NCBI GenBank assembly: GCA_001949185.1
Contig: BDGG01000012.1
Location: 1,666,973 to 1,730,972 of the forward strand
Source: Ramazzottius varieornatus
Taxonomy: Eukaryota > Animalia > Tardigrada
DNA length: 64,000 bases
Direction of reading: 5' to 3'
Under the pieces are notes generated by a model. The model was given only the letters and a program-made list of their open reading frames with translations. It was not told where the DNA came from and made no database searches. The position numbers were made by a program, and so were the translations under genes. Below are positions 4,032 through 11,512 of this stretch, in pieces; positions within the stretch are counted from its first letter, which is position 1, and each line of letters starts with the position of its first letter.

Positions 4032-4189
4032 ACAATTTATAGGACACCGGTAAGGAATCTCTGCACAACGGAAACACTTAAAATGGTAAATTCGAAAATC
4101 AATACAAAAGATTATGAATCACAGCTTGTAAAAACTTTCACAGACGTCAATTAAGGCAACTTTTCCGTCGAGGTAGGATCTCAACAATA

Positions 4190-7100
4190 TCAACTTCGAT
4201 TAAAACTAAACCAACAAGTCAAAAAAATGAGCCAGAGCATAACCAGCGGGGAATTTGTGAGCAATGCAGGACTGCTGGACGGTGTTGTCGCTGGGGGTGC
4301 ACTTCCGGTCACCGTAGGAAGACCTGGTGTGATGGAAGGGTTCACTGGCGACCCGGAAGTGGCTGGTGGGGGTGTGGAGGTGCTTGTATCTGTAAAACTG
4401 GCTTGCTACGGTCAGTGCTCTGGATGATGCCTGAAGGACGCCACAAAATTCAGGTCTTCGTTACCTGGACCGGGGTTAGTAAACTCATCGGTGATCTGAT
4501 ATTCACGAAGCATGCTCTTCTCTGTCCTAACGGTTAGTACATAGCCTGCTTGTGGTAGATCGTAAATTTGACCGGAGTCAACCTCAAGAACTAAATGAGG
4601 AGCTATCGAGGTTTTCGAGACGATGTGGATCGTCATTGTGTTGTGGAAGAAGTCAAAAGTCATGTTGAACTGATGGCCCAAGTGTTTGTAGCCTACTAGG
4701 CTCCATCTGGAGGTTTTAGGCAGGCGCTGTGGATGCAGAGCTAGATGGTCTTCCCTGATTCGGATGCCACCATATCCGTTGATTACAGCCTGGAAGAAAC
4801 AGAGATGAGTATAGGTATACGGTTGCCATTGCCAATGGAGTTCCACGTAGTAAAAAGCCGCTTTCCTCTTCTGTCTCGCCATCGAACTGCGTCAGTTTCC
4901 CTCAGTGAAACAGGTTGATAAGCTGAGTCAGGCTCACCTGCAGGAATCCACCCATGCCAGTTAAGAAGTTCAAAGCGCCAGCGCCATCTCGAACTTCAGA
5001 CCACACCTGCAAAATATTTTTCGTTGAAAGAAGTCTGATCAAAATCTGGTCTTGATGGTTCCACGTACGCCAAACGGTTGGACGATGTTCTCGTAATTCC
5101 GCTCGAAGAGAGTATCTGCCTCGACCAGGTTACCGAGCTCCAGGTACCCGACCGAGAACATTCCCCACGTCATGGCTGGTCCCTCAACATCCGTCACCTG
5201 AAACACTCAGCGGTAAAGAAAACACAACAAAGCCTCCCAAGAACAGATATACCTTGCGGTAGATATCCAAGTCGTTCTTTCGAAGTTCCGGCGACATGTC
5301 CATATCCAAAGGATAGCCCAGTAGAATCACATCCCCTTGCTTGATCTCGGGCACATTCACGTTACTTCTCGGATGCCAAACGCCTATAACACACCATCCC
5401 TTGGAAGCTTCGCTGTGACAGTTAGGTTGCCCTTACTTCGAAGACAGTCATCGCCGAGCTTACCAGGTGTATATCCATCAAACTCCAAATGGAACTCTTT
5501 ACCGTCCATGACACTCTTGGGCATCGCTAGGCGCTGTGCAGTGGTGAGCCAAAGGTTCAGGTCTGGATGAGAATTGTTAGTAATCTTGAAGACGTATGCC
5601 GGCAGCCTAGATTACATAGACACTATTCAGATCAACGCCACTCAGGAAACACGTCTGGATAAATTAGCACGTACTCTAATGAAAGCTTAGCGACGTAGTT
5701 CGTATAGATGGAGTTGCTAACAGGGAAGTGGTACTCATCAGGTGGCATCACATCTGAAAAAAGAGAAATCCTTTCTAAAAGTACTGAAGCCGGAAGTGCT
5801 ATTTTAGCGACGCAAGAGGGAATTCTTACTAATGATACTACAAGTGACAGTAGTTCCGTTCGAACATGCGGAGCGGCTCTGCCAGAAGATGGCCATCTCG
5901 ACCGCCATTTCCTCCAACCTCATCTCCCTGATGGCCTTCATCTTGTCGTCGATCACGTACAGGTACTGCCGAACAGCGAAAGCGATGTCACCGGTGATAT
6001 GGATTTCGTACTCTCCGGATGGTGGCCACGGCGAAGTTTCCGTACCTGCATTCAGGAGCGAACTCCATATCCAGTATTTTAACTGTTTTTGGAAACCAAA
6101 GCAAAGCCACGCGCGCTACACGCCGATGCATACCCGTATAGGCAGATTCCCAGGCAAACTTGGCACCTTTATATCCGTACAGAATAGCGTTGGCTTTCGC
6201 GGCATCCAGTGTCAGGGTTCGAGCTTCGAGCAGAAGTCTAGCTTGCTCGGGATGTAAGTTCAGGATGGGTGGATACTGAAAAACGAAGACAACGGTTATC
6301 CTACCGAAACATAGTAAGATATGAAGGACTGTGTCAAAACATACCATCCAGGTTTCGGTATCCCAAAAGATGTGTCCAGAGTAGTCAGAGTTTGCTGGTC
6401 CACGAGCTAAACCACCTATAACCAGAAATCTGTAATCTATATTCTGCGCTAACGAGTAAGAATGTTCGGATGCGGTGATGACGAGCCTGGGCTGAGTCCG
6501 ATGAAGCGGTTGCCCTGGTCTTGCTGGTTGGGCAAGGAGGCAAGCAGGAAGTACAGGCTACCATATAGTCCTTGAGCTAGCTCGAAGTTCTCGGTGGCAT
6601 CTACATCGATTCTGCCGTTGTCCCAGTAGGAGCCCCACTTGGCAATATGAGCGTTCTTGATAAACTCGGAGGACTTTCCGCGGAACTTCTGGGCCGCCTA
6701 TTGCCATCGAGATAAAACTTAGGTAAACCTGTAACAAGGTGAAAGTCCTAGGCCACCTACCGCCCGAGTCTCACTGGGCCTTGAACTGATGTAGACGTGG
6801 ATTTCGCGCGAAACTTCCTGGCCAGCAGCAAGGACGAAGTTGCTAATGGTGGAACGCCAGATCATGTTGATCGGTGAAGGAGCCATTCCTTTCAACTCAG
6901 GGATGACAGTTCTCCCGTCAGCTTCCTTGAACAATGACTCGGGTTGGTTCCTGCAAACCAAGAGCTGGGTATTTAATCGAAATAAGCTGACTCGAAATAA
7001 TGTAAACTTGAGGCAATAACGCTTCTGTTTGTGGAATGTGAAGGGAATATTCATACCCGCCAATGGATATTTGCCGTGTCGGCTGGAAGACGATATCCTC

Positions 7101-7700
7101 ACTCCTAAGCTGGCTTTCATCCGGGAATTTATCAAAGAAAATTTCCACCGGATCTTGCTCTCGGCTGTCGCGATGCGAGAGTGCGTCTTTGGGTCGCGTG
7201 AACGAGACATGGGCAGCAAGTAGTCTGTCGTTGTCCCGGTGAGCAAAGATTTCATGTGTAATGACCAAGGACGGATTCCGGAGCCTTGTAGTCGTCGTGA
7301 AAATACCTAATCGAAAAACAAACGGTAACACAAACCAATATCAAACCTTCGAATTTACGCTGGGAACCAAAACCGGAAACAGCATTACCTTCCCTGACGT
7401 TGAGCTCGTATGTCCGATTGACCAGCTGCGCGGGCAATGTGTGGTTGGTCCTCACAGTAAAAGCTACCAATGATGGAATACGTGCGCGACTACTCTTGGG
7501 TCCCTCACCGTTGTACAGACCGTTCATGTGAACCCACGAACTGTTGACCATCGTGGCGATATGACCATTCCCCACTTCCGGCATGTACTTCGCCGCTGGT
7601 AAACTGCAACGTAGCATTCATTGTTACACTGATGATCCATTTTCATCCGTGAATTAACGCAGTTTTGTACGATATTTACCTTGTGGACTGAAACAGCCAT
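4190..7700 (-). CDS. PGGHG: C-terminal, catalytically intact GH65 module (PGGHG-like hydrolase)
   Basis: Motifs WDTE (~6355), PPDEYH (~5740), KQGD (~5335), GPAMTW (~5170), WSE (~5000) and FLQAVINGYGG are all present across consistent GT-AG introns. Confidence 0.9.
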
Positions 7701-8528
7701 GGGAGTTGTGACCAATGGAAGGAATCCGCCGCGACCGCTACCAAGTAAATCCGGCTTCTTTTGACGGTGATGTGGCCTCCGACTTTGACTCGCCAGGATG
7801 TGTCGTTTCCTCCGGTGTAGTCCGCGCTCCCAGGTTCGATGTATAGCGTGGCATGTTGGTTCTCCCTGGTTACAGTAATCAGGATCTCCTCTCTTGAAAA
7901 TCTTAGATTCACGATGAAGCCCTGGTAGTTAAGCGCATGGATGGACCATGCTTCAGTTCCTTCCGGGATGATGGGGTCAATCAACAGCCTGTTGTTGTCC
8001 AGTTGGATACCGGCGTATCCGTTGAGGACACCTTGGAGGAAGGCACCGTGTCCCGCAAGGCTAGTTCTGAATGGCCTGTCAGTGGGTAAAGTCTCTCCCG
8101 GCGACGTCCACTGGTACTCTGGTATGATCTGATGACAGATGATCGAGTAAGTAATGCAGGCAATCAGAGAACCCAGTGTGAGTTTGATAAGGAGACGCAT
8201 AGTCTACCTACGTGGAAGTCGCCTTGGACGACGGAGAGCATGTCAGGCACAGGTTGGGACAGGCCTGACAATGGGCAATTACGTCTCTTGGCAAGTTCGT
8301 AAACACTACGCCGTATGGGAACATATGTTGACTTGATATCGCACTGAAAGAAACAGATAGCACCTGTTTGCAACATAGGTAACTGTAGCTAGGTCTACTG
8401 CTATTGCCAAATGCCACAACGTGCAAGCGGAAACCGGTTCAGCAGCTGCCGGCGGCTGAAAAGACCAATAAAGTTAGTTCTCGAAAGGTCCATCCTCGTA
8501 TGTACGTACGGTGCCTGTACTTTAATTT

Positions 8529-8564
<36 letters not shown>

Positions 8565-11512
8565 ATCCCTTATTTCCGCCGATCAGTTCGTTGCCTACTT
8601 GTTGTACAACGAAGACCTTGCAAAACGCGCGAAAAAACGAGTGAAGACCCAGACTACGACAGACCTGAGATATGGCGTGTGGTGAGCTGAAGGGCTGAGC
8701 TTTTGGAAGACTTCGCTAGGTCAACGAAGGCGTCAGGTTTCCGCCTTCCTGCATTGAGCATCCGTAGCGTCGCAAGTCACACACCTGCATGTACGTTTCT
8801 TACGCATAGTGGCTAGCACTATCTAATTCTCTGGACTTTCCCCTATCCACTAACTCAGACGACATATCTATAGTGGAACTTTTAATCGACTTACTGATCC
8901 TTTCTTCGGAGCATGGTCGATTAGGTCCGCTTCAACCATACTACAGAACTGCGCTTGGTCCTCCGTATCGAAAGCCTTATGCCGAAGCGGAAAGTACGCC
9001 AATAAGACGTCCGGTTCGCATGACTCTGCAAAGAGAAAGCCCACGCTATCACTATAGGAATCTTTGGCTTGCGGTATGCGAAACTTACGTTCTGTGTGCT
9101 CGGGAGTACTCGACGTCAAATGCCCCGACGTAAGGAGATCCCGTGGAAAGTAGATGTTGTCAGCAAGGCGTTGAAGTTCAGCCACGTCCAAGTTGACGCC
9201 ACCACCGGAAAAGCCGAGGCGCGAGATCGACTCTGGCAGCCTCAAAGCCACCGAAGCTACAGCGTGAGTGAAAGTGTGGAACTGGACATAAAAGCGAGGG
9301 TCGATCGGATCTGGAGCTGTCGTGGCAGTCAGGAATCGGTTGATCCCGACGACCACTGCAAAAGCAATGTCATGTGAACCTTTCGTGGTCTGAAGTACTT
9401 CTAACTATCGTCTGCTCGACTTACGCTGTTTGATGCCAGACTTTCCTTCCTGCTCTCCATCCAGCCGCTGGACGAGGTGGAGGTAAAACTCAGCAATTCT
9501 GGAAGCCGTTCTCATCATCGCATCTTTGTCGATCCATTCGCTCGGTGGAACTGCTTTAATGTACTCTTGCAGAGCAAATGCGACATCACCACTGCAGAAC
9601 AGAATCACTAGCTAATCTATCATGTTCATTTACCGGGCTTTTCCTCTTTACCTGACGTGAACGGCGCGAAGGAAGTCCATGTCTTGGCTACGATCGTGAA
9701 CCTCCCACAGTTCTTCTCCGGTAACTGTTTCATAAGGATACTTCCCACCTCTGTACGAAAAGTTCCCTGAAGACGCAGCAGGAGCATTCTCGAGAGCTTC
9801 CACCCACTGATCAACTCGATTCTTGATCATCAGCTCGGCAGCTGCAGGTTGAAGCAGTAAGAGGGACGGAAGAACGTAGATTTCTTGTTCCCACCGGACA
9901 CGCCCAGCTGAAGCTAGATCCGCCTCGTTATCGTCATCTACAAACAAGAATTCCCGATGAGATTAGTGGAAAACAACTAGTACCAATAACGCTTACCGAC
10001 TACAGGACCAACGCCCAGGAAATCTTCCAAGAAGTACGGATGACTGGGGATGGCGCTTAGTACAGTGTACAGAGATGAAAATACTGCGTTCTGCAGTTTG
10101 TGTCCCGTGGACCCGGGAGCTGCTTGGAACTGTATCCTTCCTTCGTTGTATCGAAGTCCCCAGAAGTCACGATGACGTGAGTACAGAACTCCAGACGCGA
10201 ACTGTTCATGACCTTCGTCGTATGCCTGTGGGAAAAACGCGTTAGCCTCGTCCAACCGAAAACTTACCACGCAAACATACACCGTGTCGCTGAGATCTCC
10301 CAACCAACATACCTTGCGTGCGGCGGTTATGTTTCTCGAGATAGAAGTCAAGAACACTCCTTTAGCGGATATTGTGTTCCGGTTTAGAGTGATGCTGGGA
10401 GGAGCCTGGTCCCACATGATGGCAATGTTCGAGCTTGTCCTGTTGGAACTATCAGGGTTGCCTGTCACGTTCCCTTCTGCAACACTGTATGGAAGAAACG
10501 ACGAAGGGTCAGCAGAAGATTTAAAGCATACCTTAGATACACATACCCGAAATACACCTACCTGACTTTCTTCGTCCACGGAGCCAGGCCTCCGGTTGAC
10601 AGGACCGTGTGAGTGAAAGTCATGTCATTGGCAGTGAAGATGCATTCGTTAGCTAAGTTGTCGTAGCATCCTTTTCGCCAAAGAGGGATGGATATTTCTT
10701 CGTTTGCAGAGAGCTTGCCAAGTACCTCAGCTTCTAGTTCCATCACAAACAACTCGGGAATGCGGACGTGCGCGTAAAACCTAAATAATAAGAAGGAACA
10801 AAGTCGTCCAAAATATCAGCAGGAAGAAAACATCGAAGCACGATGGGCGTGTACCGTTGTCGAACCCAATACCGCTGTTGAACAGTCACCACTGTCTCGA
10901 AAAACCCTGAAACAAGTCTTCCTTAGCAAACTGATCGATAAAATAGATTAATAGAAATACCTTTGTCTCGACACCTTACCTGCTTCAGGATTGAATGTGT
11001 AATTCACGCTGGATCCTGCTATGTCCTGATGGCGGTCTACCCGAACAGCCATAGTAGACGGCAGCCCGACGCGGACTGGGCGGTCCGCCCTCGTAAAGAG
11101 ATCTTGAACTTGCATGCGTTCACCAAATAACGGTGTCGATAAGTACCCATTGCCCAGGTGAGGAAGGGGATAATTGTCAGGTAACCTGTCGACCAAGACC
11201 AGTTATTTCAACATTCCATATAAACTTTCCTATGTAACTCACTCGACTTGCGCGTGATGACAGCGCACCCTGAGCAAATAACCTGGTCTGCGATGACGTC
11301 AGTGCGCAACCGAGCAATCTCAAGAAATTACGTGCCAAGATATATTCCGTAGGACGGGAGAAACGACCAAGACGTTGTGTGTATATTTACAGCATTAACA
11401 AGTTCACAACTTACCATTGCGTTCTGGTGGACAGCTGAGCTGCGGATAGGTGGAGGAAGATCGAGAAGATCGAGAGCGCAGACGCAGCTCGGCTGTTCCT
11501 GGACGATGCCAT
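4190..11512 (-). CDS. Tandem double-GH65 protein (PGGHG/ATHL1, acid trehalase-like): signal peptide, degenerate GH65 module, intact GH65 module, S/T/P stalk, GPI signal
   Basis: Exon 1 (11512-11415) encodes MASSRNSRAASALSIFSIFLHLSAAQLSTRTQ. Module 1 spans 11185-7680. A phase-2 intron at 7679-7604 joins ...WLFQST-S-LPAAKYMPEVGNGH in frame. Module 2 has GHIFWDTETW, EIHITGDIAF, VMPPDEYH, KQGDVILLGYPL, GPAMTW, VWSE and NFLTGMGGFLQ. The last exon (4389-4190) encodes DTSTSTPPPATSGSP...SSSPALLTNSPLVMLWLIFLTCWFSFNRS*. Confidence 0.8.
7680..11512 (-). CDS. N-terminal degenerate GH65 module (predicted pseudoenzyme)
   Basis: It is colinear with module 2: PHLGNGY, WEQEIYVLP, GGKYPYE, VHVSGDVAFALQEY, PDVLLAYFPL and GAFLQGVLNGYAG. 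The catalytic motifs are replaced. The small exons at 8130-8455 are tentative. Confidence 0.8.
8530..8562. repeat. (CA)n microsatellite, intronic
   Basis: About 16 CA units are visible directly. Confidence 0.95.

What the first reader, a model, noticed from the sequence alone, without database searches (positions are those of the whole stretch)
4190..11512. One gene encoding a GPI-anchored tandem GH65 ectoenzyme (dead module fused to an active module), resembling lactase-phlorizin hydrolase architecture
Seen in sequence: the apparent upstream GH65 gene runs into a canonical 76-nt phase-2 intron (7679-7604, AG|gtaaat...gcag|T) that splices in frame into the second GH65 module, and the second module has no separate signal peptide. 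Exon 1 encodes a signal peptide, and the last exon encodes a mucin-like S/T/P stalk and a hydrophobic GPI-type tail. Both modules appear to share intron positions (phase 2 just before L-P...GNG, and phase 1 after NPEAG / NVREG), which points to intragenic duplication. Established knowledge: animal PGGHG/ATHL1 is a single-module enzyme without a signal peptide, fungal GH65 Ath1 is an acid trehalase, and mammalian LPH carries inactive N-terminal GH1 repeats that act as an intramolecular chaperone. Inference: this is a cell-surface glucosidase, possibly in the gut brush border or cuticle, acting on trehalose, kojibiose or collagen Glc-Gal-Hyl. I do not know of such an architecture in GH65. It could matter for sugar handling in a desiccation-tolerant animal.
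Basis: partly seen in the sequence, partly recalled or inferred. Interest (0 to 1): 0.85.

Follow-up and report, generated by a model that had tools for sequence, protein, structure and literature searches.

The report
Fused double GH65 glucosidase gene, tardigrade
Two neighbouring copies of a sugar-cleaving enzyme gene in a tardigrade genome have merged into one gene, and public RNA data show they are spliced into a single message that encodes a degenerate copy followed by an intact copy, with signals for secretion and membrane anchoring.

Summary
On the minus strand, 11512-4190, I built a 26-exon model with one open frame of 1592 aa. It reads: signal-peptide-like exon 1, GH65 module 1, GH65 module 2, an S/T/P stalk, then a hydrophobic C-terminal tail.

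Transcript-like contigs from four independent studies splice out the 76-nt intron 7604-7679. None of them covers that intron. Single 4.7-4.9 kb contigs span both modules, so this is one gene, not two.

Module 2 keeps the three carboxylates that mutagenesis showed to be needed in human PGGHG (Asp301, Glu430, Glu574). Module 1 is very divergent: Asp is changed to Glu, the general-acid motif is unrecognisable, and the base position is ambiguous. It is probably inactive, but it is conserved in another tardigrade.

Six intron positions and phases are shared between the modules, including intron 1 and the junction intron. This points to a tandem duplication followed by a fusion.

The last intron (4390-4464) is spliced in one run and retained in another, so anchored and soluble isoforms are both likely.

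The same architecture already exists as an uncharacterised 1497-aa RefSeq model in Paramacrobiotus metropolitanus. Double-GH65 models with two intact modules exist for other invertebrates. I found no paper describing any of them. GPI anchoring, cell-surface location and substrate remain inferences.

The parts
4190..11512 (-). Whole coding region of the fused gene: 26 exons, 1592 aa, ATG at 11512, stop at 4192-4190
   Evidence: Model built has one open frame. Exons 7-26 match the RNA contig joints and lengths. Exons 1-6 are inferred from homology and splice consensus.
11415..11512 (-). Exon 1: signal-peptide-like N-terminus MASSRNSRAASALSIFSIFLHLSAA|QLSTRTQ, followed by a phase-2 donor TG|GTAAGT
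   Evidence: the N-terminus is one of the two most hydrophobic windows. P0057 has a matching signal peptide. Not run through SignalP. Not covered by the laid reads.
7680..11185 (-). Module 1 (exons 2-12): divergent GH65 module, about 21% identical to module 2, probably inactive
   Evidence: Exon 7 alone reaches the Pfam Glyco_hydro_65m cut-off (28.4 bits against 27). Exon 7 aligns to human PGGHG chain 297-352 with GRVRWEQE in place of GHVFWDQD. Exon 9 has no GH65 similarity. Exon 12 aligns to PGGHG 586-650. hhalign of module 1 against module 2 gives probability 100%.
9089..9355 (-). Exon 9 of module 1: the place where the general-acid motif (PDEY) should lie; the motif is not recognisable here
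   Evidence: The Paramacrobiotus module 1 also lacks an acidic residue at this position.
8344..8894 (-). Intron 10, 551 nt, by far the longest intron of the gene; contains a (GT/CA)n microsatellite at about 8521-8571
   Evidence: Joint 8343/8895 seen in all four runs. A low-depth X1 contig covers 8572-8924, which is unspliced. The ORF listing shows the CVCVCV repeat.
7680..7722 (-). End of exon 12, encoding the linker FHWSQLPWLFQST; it corresponds to the mature N-terminal segment of single-module relatives
   Evidence: The same motif follows a signal peptide directly in P0059 (LEHWSQIPYKFETT). It also ends the upstream exon of the neighbouring single-module paralog (HWSRSPWLFQSK). Fragments P0001-P0003 from other taxa end at the same boundary.
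7604..7679 (-). Junction intron 12: 76 nt, GT..AG, phase 2, joins module 1 to module 2; homologous in position and phase to intron 1
   Evidence: Joint seen in all four runs and no contig covers the intron. It shares alignment column and phase with intron 1.
4465..7603 (-). Module 2 (exons 13-25): intact PGGHG-like GH65 hydrolase module
   Evidence: Profile score 937 bits. It is 50-58% identical to tardigrade homologs and 37% identical to P0007. All introns are confirmed by contig joints.
6345..6415 (-). Exon 17: GHIFWDTETWM, carrying the equivalent of Asp301 of human PGGHG
   Evidence: query residues 1-23 align to chain 285-307 of 9sd4/9sd7. The chain index is the human numbering plus 1.
5675..5753 (-). 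Exon 20: MPPDEYH, the general-acid Glu (human Glu430; FjGH65A Glu472)
   Evidence: query residues 2-24 align to chain 427-449. PMC8626586 and PMC11012932 identify the residues.
4938..5006 (-). Exon 24: VWSE...NFLTGMGGFLQ, the general-base Glu (human Glu574; FjGH65A Glu616)
   Evidence: query residues 1-23 align to chain 572-594, E = 3e-6.
6416..6486 (-). Intron 16, a GC..AG intron of 71 nt
   Evidence: The joint 6414/6486 is reported with ends CC..AG and 3 ambiguous letters. Only the GC-AG placement fits.
4390..4464 (-). Last intron: 75 nt, phase 1, spliced or retained depending on the run
   Evidence: It is spliced in the X7 main contig (depth bins and 192 letters). It is retained in the X1 main contig, where 4150-4788 is one contiguous piece. 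The X4 and X13 main contigs stop exactly at 4465. Retention gives ...PGPGNEDLNFVASFRHHPEH*.
4190..4389 (-). Last exon: S/T/P-rich stalk (about 49 aa, 65% S/T/P), candidate omega region SSS, spacer, hydrophobic tail LVMLWLIFLTCWFSF plus NRS, then stop
   Evidence: Similar hydrophobic C-termini occur in P0057, P0059, P0030 and P0007. Not run through NetGPI.

Best explanation
This is a single protein-coding gene of a tardigrade. The genome is 55.8 Mb in 200 contigs, which fits Ramazzottius varieornatus.

Origin. An intron-bearing PGGHG-like GH65 gene was duplicated in tandem. The two copies then fused. The last large exon of the upstream copy became joined to the part of the downstream copy's first exon that follows its signal peptide. 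The downstream copy's first intron was kept as the junction intron.

Product. The mRNA of at least 4.8 kb encodes a signal peptide, a highly divergent GH65 module that has lost the general-acid motif, an intact GH65 hydrolase module, a mucin-like stalk and a C-terminal hydrophobic signal of GPI type.

Function. Module 2 most likely works as an inverting exo-alpha-glucosidase of the PGGHG/kojibiose-hydrolase type on the outer face of the membrane or in the secretory pathway. Module 1 most likely serves a non-catalytic role, as a structural partner, folding aid or sugar binder. Retention of the last intron yields a second, soluble isoform without the stalk and anchor.

Shown: gene structure, splicing, the continuous frame, conservation of catalytic residues in module 2, degeneration of module 1, shared introns, and two 3' isoforms.

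Inferred: signal-peptide cleavage, GPI attachment, inactivity of module 1, substrate, and the role of module 1.
For: RNA contigs from four studies splice the junction intron, and single contigs span both modules. The exon lengths sum exactly to the contig lengths. The frame is open over 1592 aa.

Exons of module 2 align to human PGGHG structures with Asp301, Glu430 and Glu574 conserved. Those residues are named in PMC11012932, and the acid and base roles come from PMC8626586.

In module 1, GRVRWEQE replaces GHxFWDxE. The acid exon has no GH65 similarity. Module 1 scores 164+51 bits against the profile, compared with 937 bits for module 2.

Module 1 groups with module 1 of Paramacrobiotus P0057 (support 100/100) and shares the motifs GR.RWEQE, YPYET and IIPE with it. 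P0057 has the same layout of signal peptide, GH65, GH65 and hydrophobic tail.

Six intron positions are shared between the modules. The linker motif is the N-terminal segment of single-module relatives. The only strong hydrophobic windows are at the two termini.
Against: Exons 1-6, including the signal-peptide exon, were not covered by the laid reads.

No SignalP or NetGPI run was possible, because the joined protein has no reference and was not sent to any tool.

The runs are flagged 'RNA? (a guess)'. That they are RNA is my inference from about 20 precise GT-AG (and one GC-AG) skips.

Contigs cannot show transcript starts, ends or isoform ratios, and they drop rare variants. A minor independent transcript for module 2 is therefore not excluded.

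A Glu may persist at the base position of module 1, and Asp to Glu is a conservative change, so inactivity is not proven.

No activity, localisation or substrate data exist.
Confidence: 0.75

Rival explanations
1. These are two separate tandem genes. Gene 1 ends at the TAA at 7678-7676, which lies inside the donor GTAAAT. Gene 2 starts at the ATG at 7617 (MLRCSLPAAKYM...) as a cytosolic PGGHG-like enzyme. The splice across them is only read-through.
For: Both the stop and an in-frame ATG exist in the 76-nt stretch. Human PGGHG has no signal peptide and starts close to the equivalent position. The Hypsibius annotations give single-module proteins.
Against: In all four runs the main contig carries the splice and no contig covers 7604-7679. 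There is no contig break at the junction. The intergenic space would be only 58 nt. The junction intron matches intron 1 in position and phase. The Paramacrobiotus RefSeq model P0057 is fused in the same way.
Confidence: 0.03
2. The gene is fused as described, but the C-terminal hydrophobic stretch is a transmembrane anchor with a 3-residue cytosolic tail, not a GPI attachment signal.
For: There are 15-16 hydrophobic residues followed by NRS. The Hypsibius P0058 model ends with a hydrophobic stretch followed by a longer charged tail, like a true transmembrane protein. No GPI predictor was run.
Against: The layout is typical of GPI signals: small residues (SSS), a spacer of about 8 residues, a short hydrophobic end and almost no cytosolic tail. 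Homologs P0057, P0059, P0007 and P0030 end in the same way. This is a judgement from established knowledge of GPI signals, not a test.
Confidence: 0.15
3. Module 1 is not dead. It is either a glycosidase with relocated catalytic residues and a new substrate, or a carbohydrate-binding (lectin-like) module that targets module 2 to its substrate.
For: Module 1 has been kept as an open frame with its own conserved motifs between two distant tardigrades, which are 30% identical over about 680 residues. A Glu sits at or near the base position (IIPE, conserved in P0057). Asp301 is replaced by Glu, not by a neutral residue.
Against: The general-acid motif cannot be found in the window's module 1. In P0057 the aligned segment has no acidic residue. 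Subsite motifs such as KQAD, GPAMTW and WES are all altered.
Confidence: 0.2
4. An internal promoter gives a shorter product. An ATG at 8200 inside intron 11 opens, in frame with exon 12, a 24-residue hydrophobic segment (MRLLIKLTLGSLIACITYSIICHQ). This could act as a signal for a protein made of the C-terminal domain of module 1 plus module 2.
For: The annotated N-termini of P0058 (Hypsibius) and P0030 (Paramacrobiotus), and the ORF fragments P0001 and P0002, begin with a similar Met-plus-hydrophobic stretch at the homologous place.
Against: No contig covers intron 11 in any of the four runs (bin 8150-8349 equals 132/200 of contig depth). A control over all 25 introns shows that intron 17 gives an equally hydrophobic in-frame Met ORF, so base composition and the habits of ORF callers explain the pattern.
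Confidence: 0.06

Closest known systems
Human/chicken PGGHG (ATHL1), EC 3.2.1.107, GH65; structures 9sd4-9sd8
   Same: Module 2 aligns over its full length. Asp301, Glu430 and Glu574 are conserved, along with the motifs GHxFWD, PDEYH, KQxDV, GPAMTW and W(S/T)E...NFLTGMGGFLQ.
   Different: The vertebrate enzyme is a single module with no signal peptide and no anchor. Here there is a second, degenerate module in front, a signal peptide, a stalk and a hydrophobic tail. Substrate was not tested.
Paramacrobiotus metropolitanus LOC129589014 (P0057, 1497 aa, 'uncharacterized protein', RefSeq model)
   Same: It has the same order of parts: signal peptide, degenerate GH65 (GRIRWEQE, no PDEY), linker (HWDRDPFLMQTNSLP), intact GH65, hydrophobic tail. 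It is co-linear with the window.
   Different: Identity is only 30% for module 1 and 50% for module 2. Its module 2 groups with a different Hypsibius paralog (P0060), so it is probably a paralog rather than the ortholog. It is a computed model with no published characterisation that I could find.
Double-GH65 gene models in other invertebrates (Anopheles spp. P0103-P0107, Porites P0102, Patella P0100, Batillaria P0101)
   Same: They have two PGGHG-like modules in one predicted protein. Several have a signal peptide and a hydrophobic C-terminus.
   Different: Both modules are intact and score about equally (roughly 550-800 bits each). The duplications are lineage-specific. The Anopheles models are inconsistent with each other: module 2 of one species is the ortholog of module 1 of another. 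This suggests merged tandem genes. None has transcript proof here.
Flavobacterium johnsoniae FjGH65A kojibiose hydrolase (7fe3)
   Same: It is a GH65 hydrolase with general acid Glu472 and general base Glu616. Both positions are conserved in module 2 (PMC8626586).
   Different: It is bacterial, has a single module and forms a hexamer. Similarity covers only the catalytic domain.
Mammalian lactase-phlorizin hydrolase (GH1 repeats I-IV)
   Different: It belongs to a different family and fold and has a true transmembrane anchor. Its pro-region is cleaved off. No cleavage site or chaperone role is shown here.
Fungal acid trehalase Ath1 (GH65)
   Same: It is a secreted or extracellular eukaryotic GH65 hydrolase.
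   Different: It is a distant relative; the fungal hit P0089 scores 118 bits with 28% identity. It has a single GH65 module and its +1 subsite residues differ (PMC8626586).

Membership tests
GH65 (CAZy) / Pfam Glyco_hydro_65m, module 2 | Sequence match to the central (alpha/alpha)6 catalytic domain above the curated threshold | tested here: met
   Exon 19 alone scores 33.8 bits against a cut-off of 27. The ORF holding exon 18 scores 27.1 bits. The module scores 937 bits against a PGGHG-like profile.
GH65 hydrolase subgroup (PGGHG / kojibiose hydrolase type), module 2 | General-acid Glu (human Glu430, FjGH65A Glu472) in the PDEY motif | tested here: met
   Exon 20, MPPDEYH, aligns to chain 427-449 of 9sd7.
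GH65 hydrolase subgroup (PGGHG / kojibiose hydrolase type), module 2 | General-base Glu (human Glu574, FjGH65A Glu616) in place of the phosphate site of the phosphorylases | tested here: met
   Exon 24, VWSE, aligns to chain 572-594, E = 3e-6. GPAMTW stands where the phosphorylases have two Ser (PMC8626586).
GH65 hydrolase subgroup (PGGHG / kojibiose hydrolase type), module 2 | Asp301-equivalent in GHxFWD | tested here: met
   Exon 17, GHIFWDTETWM, aligns to chain 285-307.
PGGHG (EC 3.2.1.107), module 2 | Hydrolysis of Glc-alpha1,2-Gal-Hyl on collagen | not testable with these tools
   This needs an enzyme assay. +1 subsite residues differ between GH65 hydrolases (PMC8626586), so substrate cannot be read from the family assignment.
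GH65, module 1 (fold membership) | Detectable homology to GH65 over the N-terminal domain, barrel and C-terminal domain | tested here: met
   Exon 7 scores 28.4 bits against a cut-off of 27 for Glyco_hydro_65m. Exon 7 matches PGGHG with E = 6e-5. Exon 12 matches PGGHG 586-650 with E = 2e-4. hhalign against the module 2 profile gives probability 100% over 693 columns.
GH65 active enzyme, module 1 | General-acid Glu in the PDEY motif | tested here: not met
   Exon 9 has no GH65 match. Alignments place Ile, Asp or Pro at that position in the window and Thr or Phe in P0057.
GH65 active enzyme, module 1 | General-base Glu | tested here: inconclusive
   hhalign pairs the Glu of IIPE with the Glu of WSE. 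An ungapped extension of the phmmer match puts Thr13 at that position, next to Glu12. MAFFT puts Tyr there.
GH65 active enzyme, module 1 | Asp301-equivalent | tested here: not met
   GRVRWEQE: the Asp is replaced by Glu, His by Arg and Phe by Arg. P0057 shows the same changes.
GPI-anchored protein | N-terminal signal peptide, plus a C-terminal signal made of a small omega residue, a spacer and a hydrophobic end without a cytosolic domain | tested here: inconclusive
   All elements are visible by eye, and the hydropathy maxima are at the two termini. No SignalP, NetGPI or experiment was done. An isoform that retains the last intron lacks the signal.

The most novel reading that the evidence does not exclude
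The fusion is a covalent pseudo-dimer. GH65 enzymes of known structure are oligomers, mostly dimers. Tardigrades may have replaced the second subunit with a tethered, catalytically silent copy that has been kept since before the split of hypsibioid and macrobiotoid tardigrades. Retention of the last intron then switches the enzyme between a membrane-anchored form and a released form.
Probability: 0.25. Interest if true: 0.6.

Novelty: new variant of a known kind. Interest (0 to 1): 0.45.

Why it matters
GH65 hydrolases of animals are known from one characterised enzyme, the cytosolic single-module collagen glucosidase PGGHG. This locus gives transcript-level proof of a different design: a secreted, probably anchored enzyme that carries a degenerate copy of itself.

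It is a clean case for studying how a pseudoenzyme module is retained next to its active twin. It also corrects how 'acid trehalase-like' genes are counted and modelled in tardigrade genomes: the Hypsibius models look truncated or split.

Any link to trehalose handling or desiccation tolerance is speculation. Trehalose is not the expected substrate of PGGHG-like enzymes.

Tried and rejected
I therefore could not check whether Hypsibius P0058-P0060 and Paramacrobiotus P0030 are truncated models or real short genes.

2. The search for homologous proteins with P0057 drew its words from module 1 and returned only P0057 itself plus one bacterial protein. This shows nothing about absence, given the limits on word matching and length.

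3. The window's own annotated protein never appeared in any search. How the public annotation models this gene is unknown.

4. A brute-force enumeration of exon paths for 10979-9938 timed out. I replaced it with reading the sequence and reasoning on homology and phase.

5. An alternative first exon inside intron 11 was rejected as the main reading, after the control over all introns and the lack of read cover.

6. The two-gene reading was rejected.

7. A furin-type cleavage between the modules was considered. The only basic cluster (VKRSR) lies in a conserved beta-strand of the C-terminal domain and does not fit R-X-K/R-R, so I make no claim.

8. No structure or complex prediction was run. The joined protein has no reference, P0057 exceeds 1200 aa, and the two modules together exceed the 1000-residue limit.

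9. The joined spliced protein was built only inside scripts from window.fa, for local alignment, hydropathy and trees. Searches were done exon by exon, by reference.

Full report
**What is there.** The region 4190-11512 holds GH65-like reading frames on the minus strand, split by many short introns. Pfam finds Glyco_hydro_65m twice, once in each half, and Glyco_hydro_65C at the end of the first half. The nearest named relatives are tardigrade proteins: Paramacrobiotus metropolitanus and Hypsibius exemplaris 'acid trehalase-like protein 1 / PGGHG-like'. The window's genome has 55.8 Mb in 200 contigs, which fits Ramazzottius varieornatus. A published comparison reports two acid trehalase-like loci for that species (PMC5531438). 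I also find two loci, both on contig 12.

**Is it one gene?** This was the key question. The 76 bases at 7679-7604 can be read in two ways. They can be a phase-2 intron. Or they can be a stop (the TAA inside GTAAAT) followed by a new ATG at 7617.
- The look-up of sequencing runs returned 14 runs that hold 55-59% of the sampled words of the 7.3-kb stretch. That is the share expected of exons.
- I laid four runs from four studies on window:4150-10149, which is 6000 letters, the operators' limit.
- Each run has one main contig that skips 20 stretches with GT..AG ends on the minus strand, and GC..AG in one case. These are therefore transcript assemblies, although the runs are only flagged 'RNA?'.
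- The joint 7603/7680 is in the main contig of all four runs.
- Depth in the bin 7550-7749 is 0.62 of contig depth in every run, which is exactly the 124 exonic positions. So nothing covers the intron.
- Contigs of 4955, 4732 and 4848 nt run across both modules.
- The two-gene reading is in effect refuted. Contigs drop rare variants and cannot show starts or ends, so a minor independent transcript is not excluded.

**Gene model.**
- I adjusted the reported joints to their GT-AG placements and recovered the unlisted joints from contig coordinates and depth arithmetic.
- Recovered features are: exon 9591-9425, intron 9088-9026, donor at 9997, and last intron 4464-4390.
- The result is a 26-exon model with one open frame of 1592 aa.
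- Exons 7-25 sum to 3603 nt. This is exactly the number of contig letters between 9937 and 4465 in run X13.
- Exons 1-6 lie outside the laid stretch. They rest on splice consensus, phase and similarity to homologs, for example GFFETV... and R-F-YAH.
- The donor of the small exon 3 could be 10855 or 10873, a difference of 6 aa.
- The contigs extend 1053-1352 letters upstream of 9937. My exons 1-6 sum to 976 nt, so the contigs reach past the ATG.

**The two modules.**
- *Module 2 (residues 803-1526).* It is 50-58% identical to tardigrade homologs and 37% identical to a single-module invertebrate protein.
  - Searched exon by exon against solved structures, its exons 17, 20 and 24 align to human PGGHG (9sd4-9sd8) at chain positions 302, 431 and 575.
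  - These are Asp301, Glu430 and Glu574 in human numbering.
  - Mutagenesis showed these three carboxylates to be needed in the human enzyme (PMC11012932). The two Glu correspond to the acid Glu472 and base Glu616 of FjGH65A (PMC8626586).
- *Module 1 (residues about 27-802).* It is homologous over its whole length (hhalign probability 100%, 693 columns) but only 21% identical to module 2. It scores 164+51 bits against the profile that gives module 2 937 bits.
  - GHxFWDxE has become GRVRWEQE.
  - The exon that should carry PDEY has no GH65 similarity at all.
  - KQAD, GPAMTW and WES are altered.
  - The base position is ambiguous, because a Glu lies at or next to it in different alignments.
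  - I therefore call module 1 probably inactive rather than proven dead.
  - It is not decaying. The frame is open, it is single-copy in the genome, and it shares its peculiar motifs with module 1 of the Paramacrobiotus protein P0057. The two cluster together with full support on a long branch.

**How it arose.**
- Six of the eleven introns of module 1 fall in the same alignment column and phase as introns of module 2. Two more lie within 6-9 columns in the same phase.
- Intron 1, which follows the signal-peptide exon, corresponds to the junction intron.
- The last 13 residues of exon 12 (FHWSQLPWLFQST) are not part of the GH65 C-terminal domain. In Hypsibius P0059 the same motif follows the signal peptide directly.
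- In the single-module paralog 6.3 kb downstream (contig 12: 1661971-1664803), the motif ends an upstream exon that is followed by the same phase-2 intron.
- The simplest history is a tandem duplication of an intron-bearing gene, followed by a deletion that joined the end of copy 1 to the middle of exon 1 of copy 2. That deletion removed copy 1's stalk and tail exon and copy 2's signal peptide.
- ORF fragments from other taxa (P0001-P0003, 42-81% identical) end at the same exon boundary. The double layout occurs in two paralog groups, so the fusion is old within eutardigrades.

**Ends of the protein.**
- Exon 1 gives MASSRNSRAASALSIFSIFLHLSAA|QL, with a basic start, a hydrophobic core and small residues at -3 and -1.
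- The last exon gives a 65% S/T/P stretch, then SSS, a spacer and LVMLWLIFLTCWFSFNRS.
- The strongest hydrophobic 15-aa windows in the protein sit at these two ends, apart from one weaker window at residue 345 inside module 1. None lies at the junction.
- P0057, P0059, P0030 and P0007 end in the same way.
- This fits a secreted, GPI-anchored protein, but I could not run a predictor.
- The last intron is handled in two ways. The X7 contig is spliced at 4465/4389. The X1 contig, which is spliced everywhere else, retains it. The X4 and X13 contigs stop exactly at the donor, as a graph assembler does at a branch.
- Retention ends the protein 19 residues later, without stalk or tail, so a soluble form is likely made as well.

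**Comparison and novelty.**
- The same architecture is present as an uncharacterised RefSeq model in Paramacrobiotus (P0057, 1497 aa).
- A search restricted to long proteins found double-GH65 models in Anopheles, Porites, Acropora, Patella, Batillaria and a chiton. In the complete models, both modules are intact and the duplicates are lineage-specific. The Anopheles models disagree with each other, which suggests merged tandem genes.
- The 2024 GH65 review does not mention tandem modules, signal peptides or GPI anchors.
- Tardigrade papers only count 'acid trehalase-like' loci.
- The finding is therefore a new variant of a known enzyme kind, with transcript proof. It is not a new kind of system.
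- The lactase-phlorizin hydrolase comparison is an analogy. Because GH65 enzymes of known structure are oligomers (PMC8626586), a tethered pseudo-dimer is an equally good guess for the role of module 1.

**Limits.**
- The joined protein was used only in local scripts. All tool searches were done exon by exon, by reference.
- No structure or complex job was possible within the size and reference rules.

Noticed in passing
G000 contig 12: 1661971-1664803, minus strand (L012: 972-3804), 6.3 kb downstream of the gene and outside the window: A single-module GH65 paralog, 49-69% identical to module 2. Its upstream exon ends ...ADIHWSRSPWLFQSK and is followed by the same phase-2 intron before SLPPVKYMPEVGNGY. 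I found no module 1 and no clear signal peptide in the exon I read.
   Followed up: partly
window 8129-8211 (intron 11): In frame with exon 12, this intron holds an ATG plus a 24-residue hydrophobic stretch (MRLLIKLTLGSLIACITYSIICHQ). It resembles the annotated N-termini of P0058 and P0030. No RNA contig covers it, and intron 17 gives a similar ORF, so it is probably an effect of base composition.
   Followed up: yes
window 8344-8894: Intron 10 is 551 nt, while all other introns are 55-229 nt. It carries a (GT/CA)n microsatellite at about 8521-8571. In run X1 a low-depth contig (14 against 95) covers 8572-8924 unspliced.
   Followed up: no
window 4150 and below; X1 contig record 1 (6750 nt): The X1 contig continues about 3.65 kb past position 4150. 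The two 3' ends therefore seem to overlap or abut.
   Followed up: no
window 6416-6486: A GC-AG intron in module 2. The corresponding intron of module 1 (9938-9996) is GT-AG.
   Followed up: partly
Proteins P0103-P0107 (Anopheles spp.): These double-GH65 gene models are mutually inconsistent: module 2 of the A. dirus model is the ortholog of module 1 of the A. atroparvus model. This suggests tandem arrays merged by annotation pipelines.
   Followed up: partly
Runs X4, X5, X6, X9 (study P2): These runs are labelled with four different organism codes (B-E), yet they hold the same share of this gene's words as the organism A runs. X4 matches at 99% or more. The labels may not name the tardigrade itself.
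   Followed up: no
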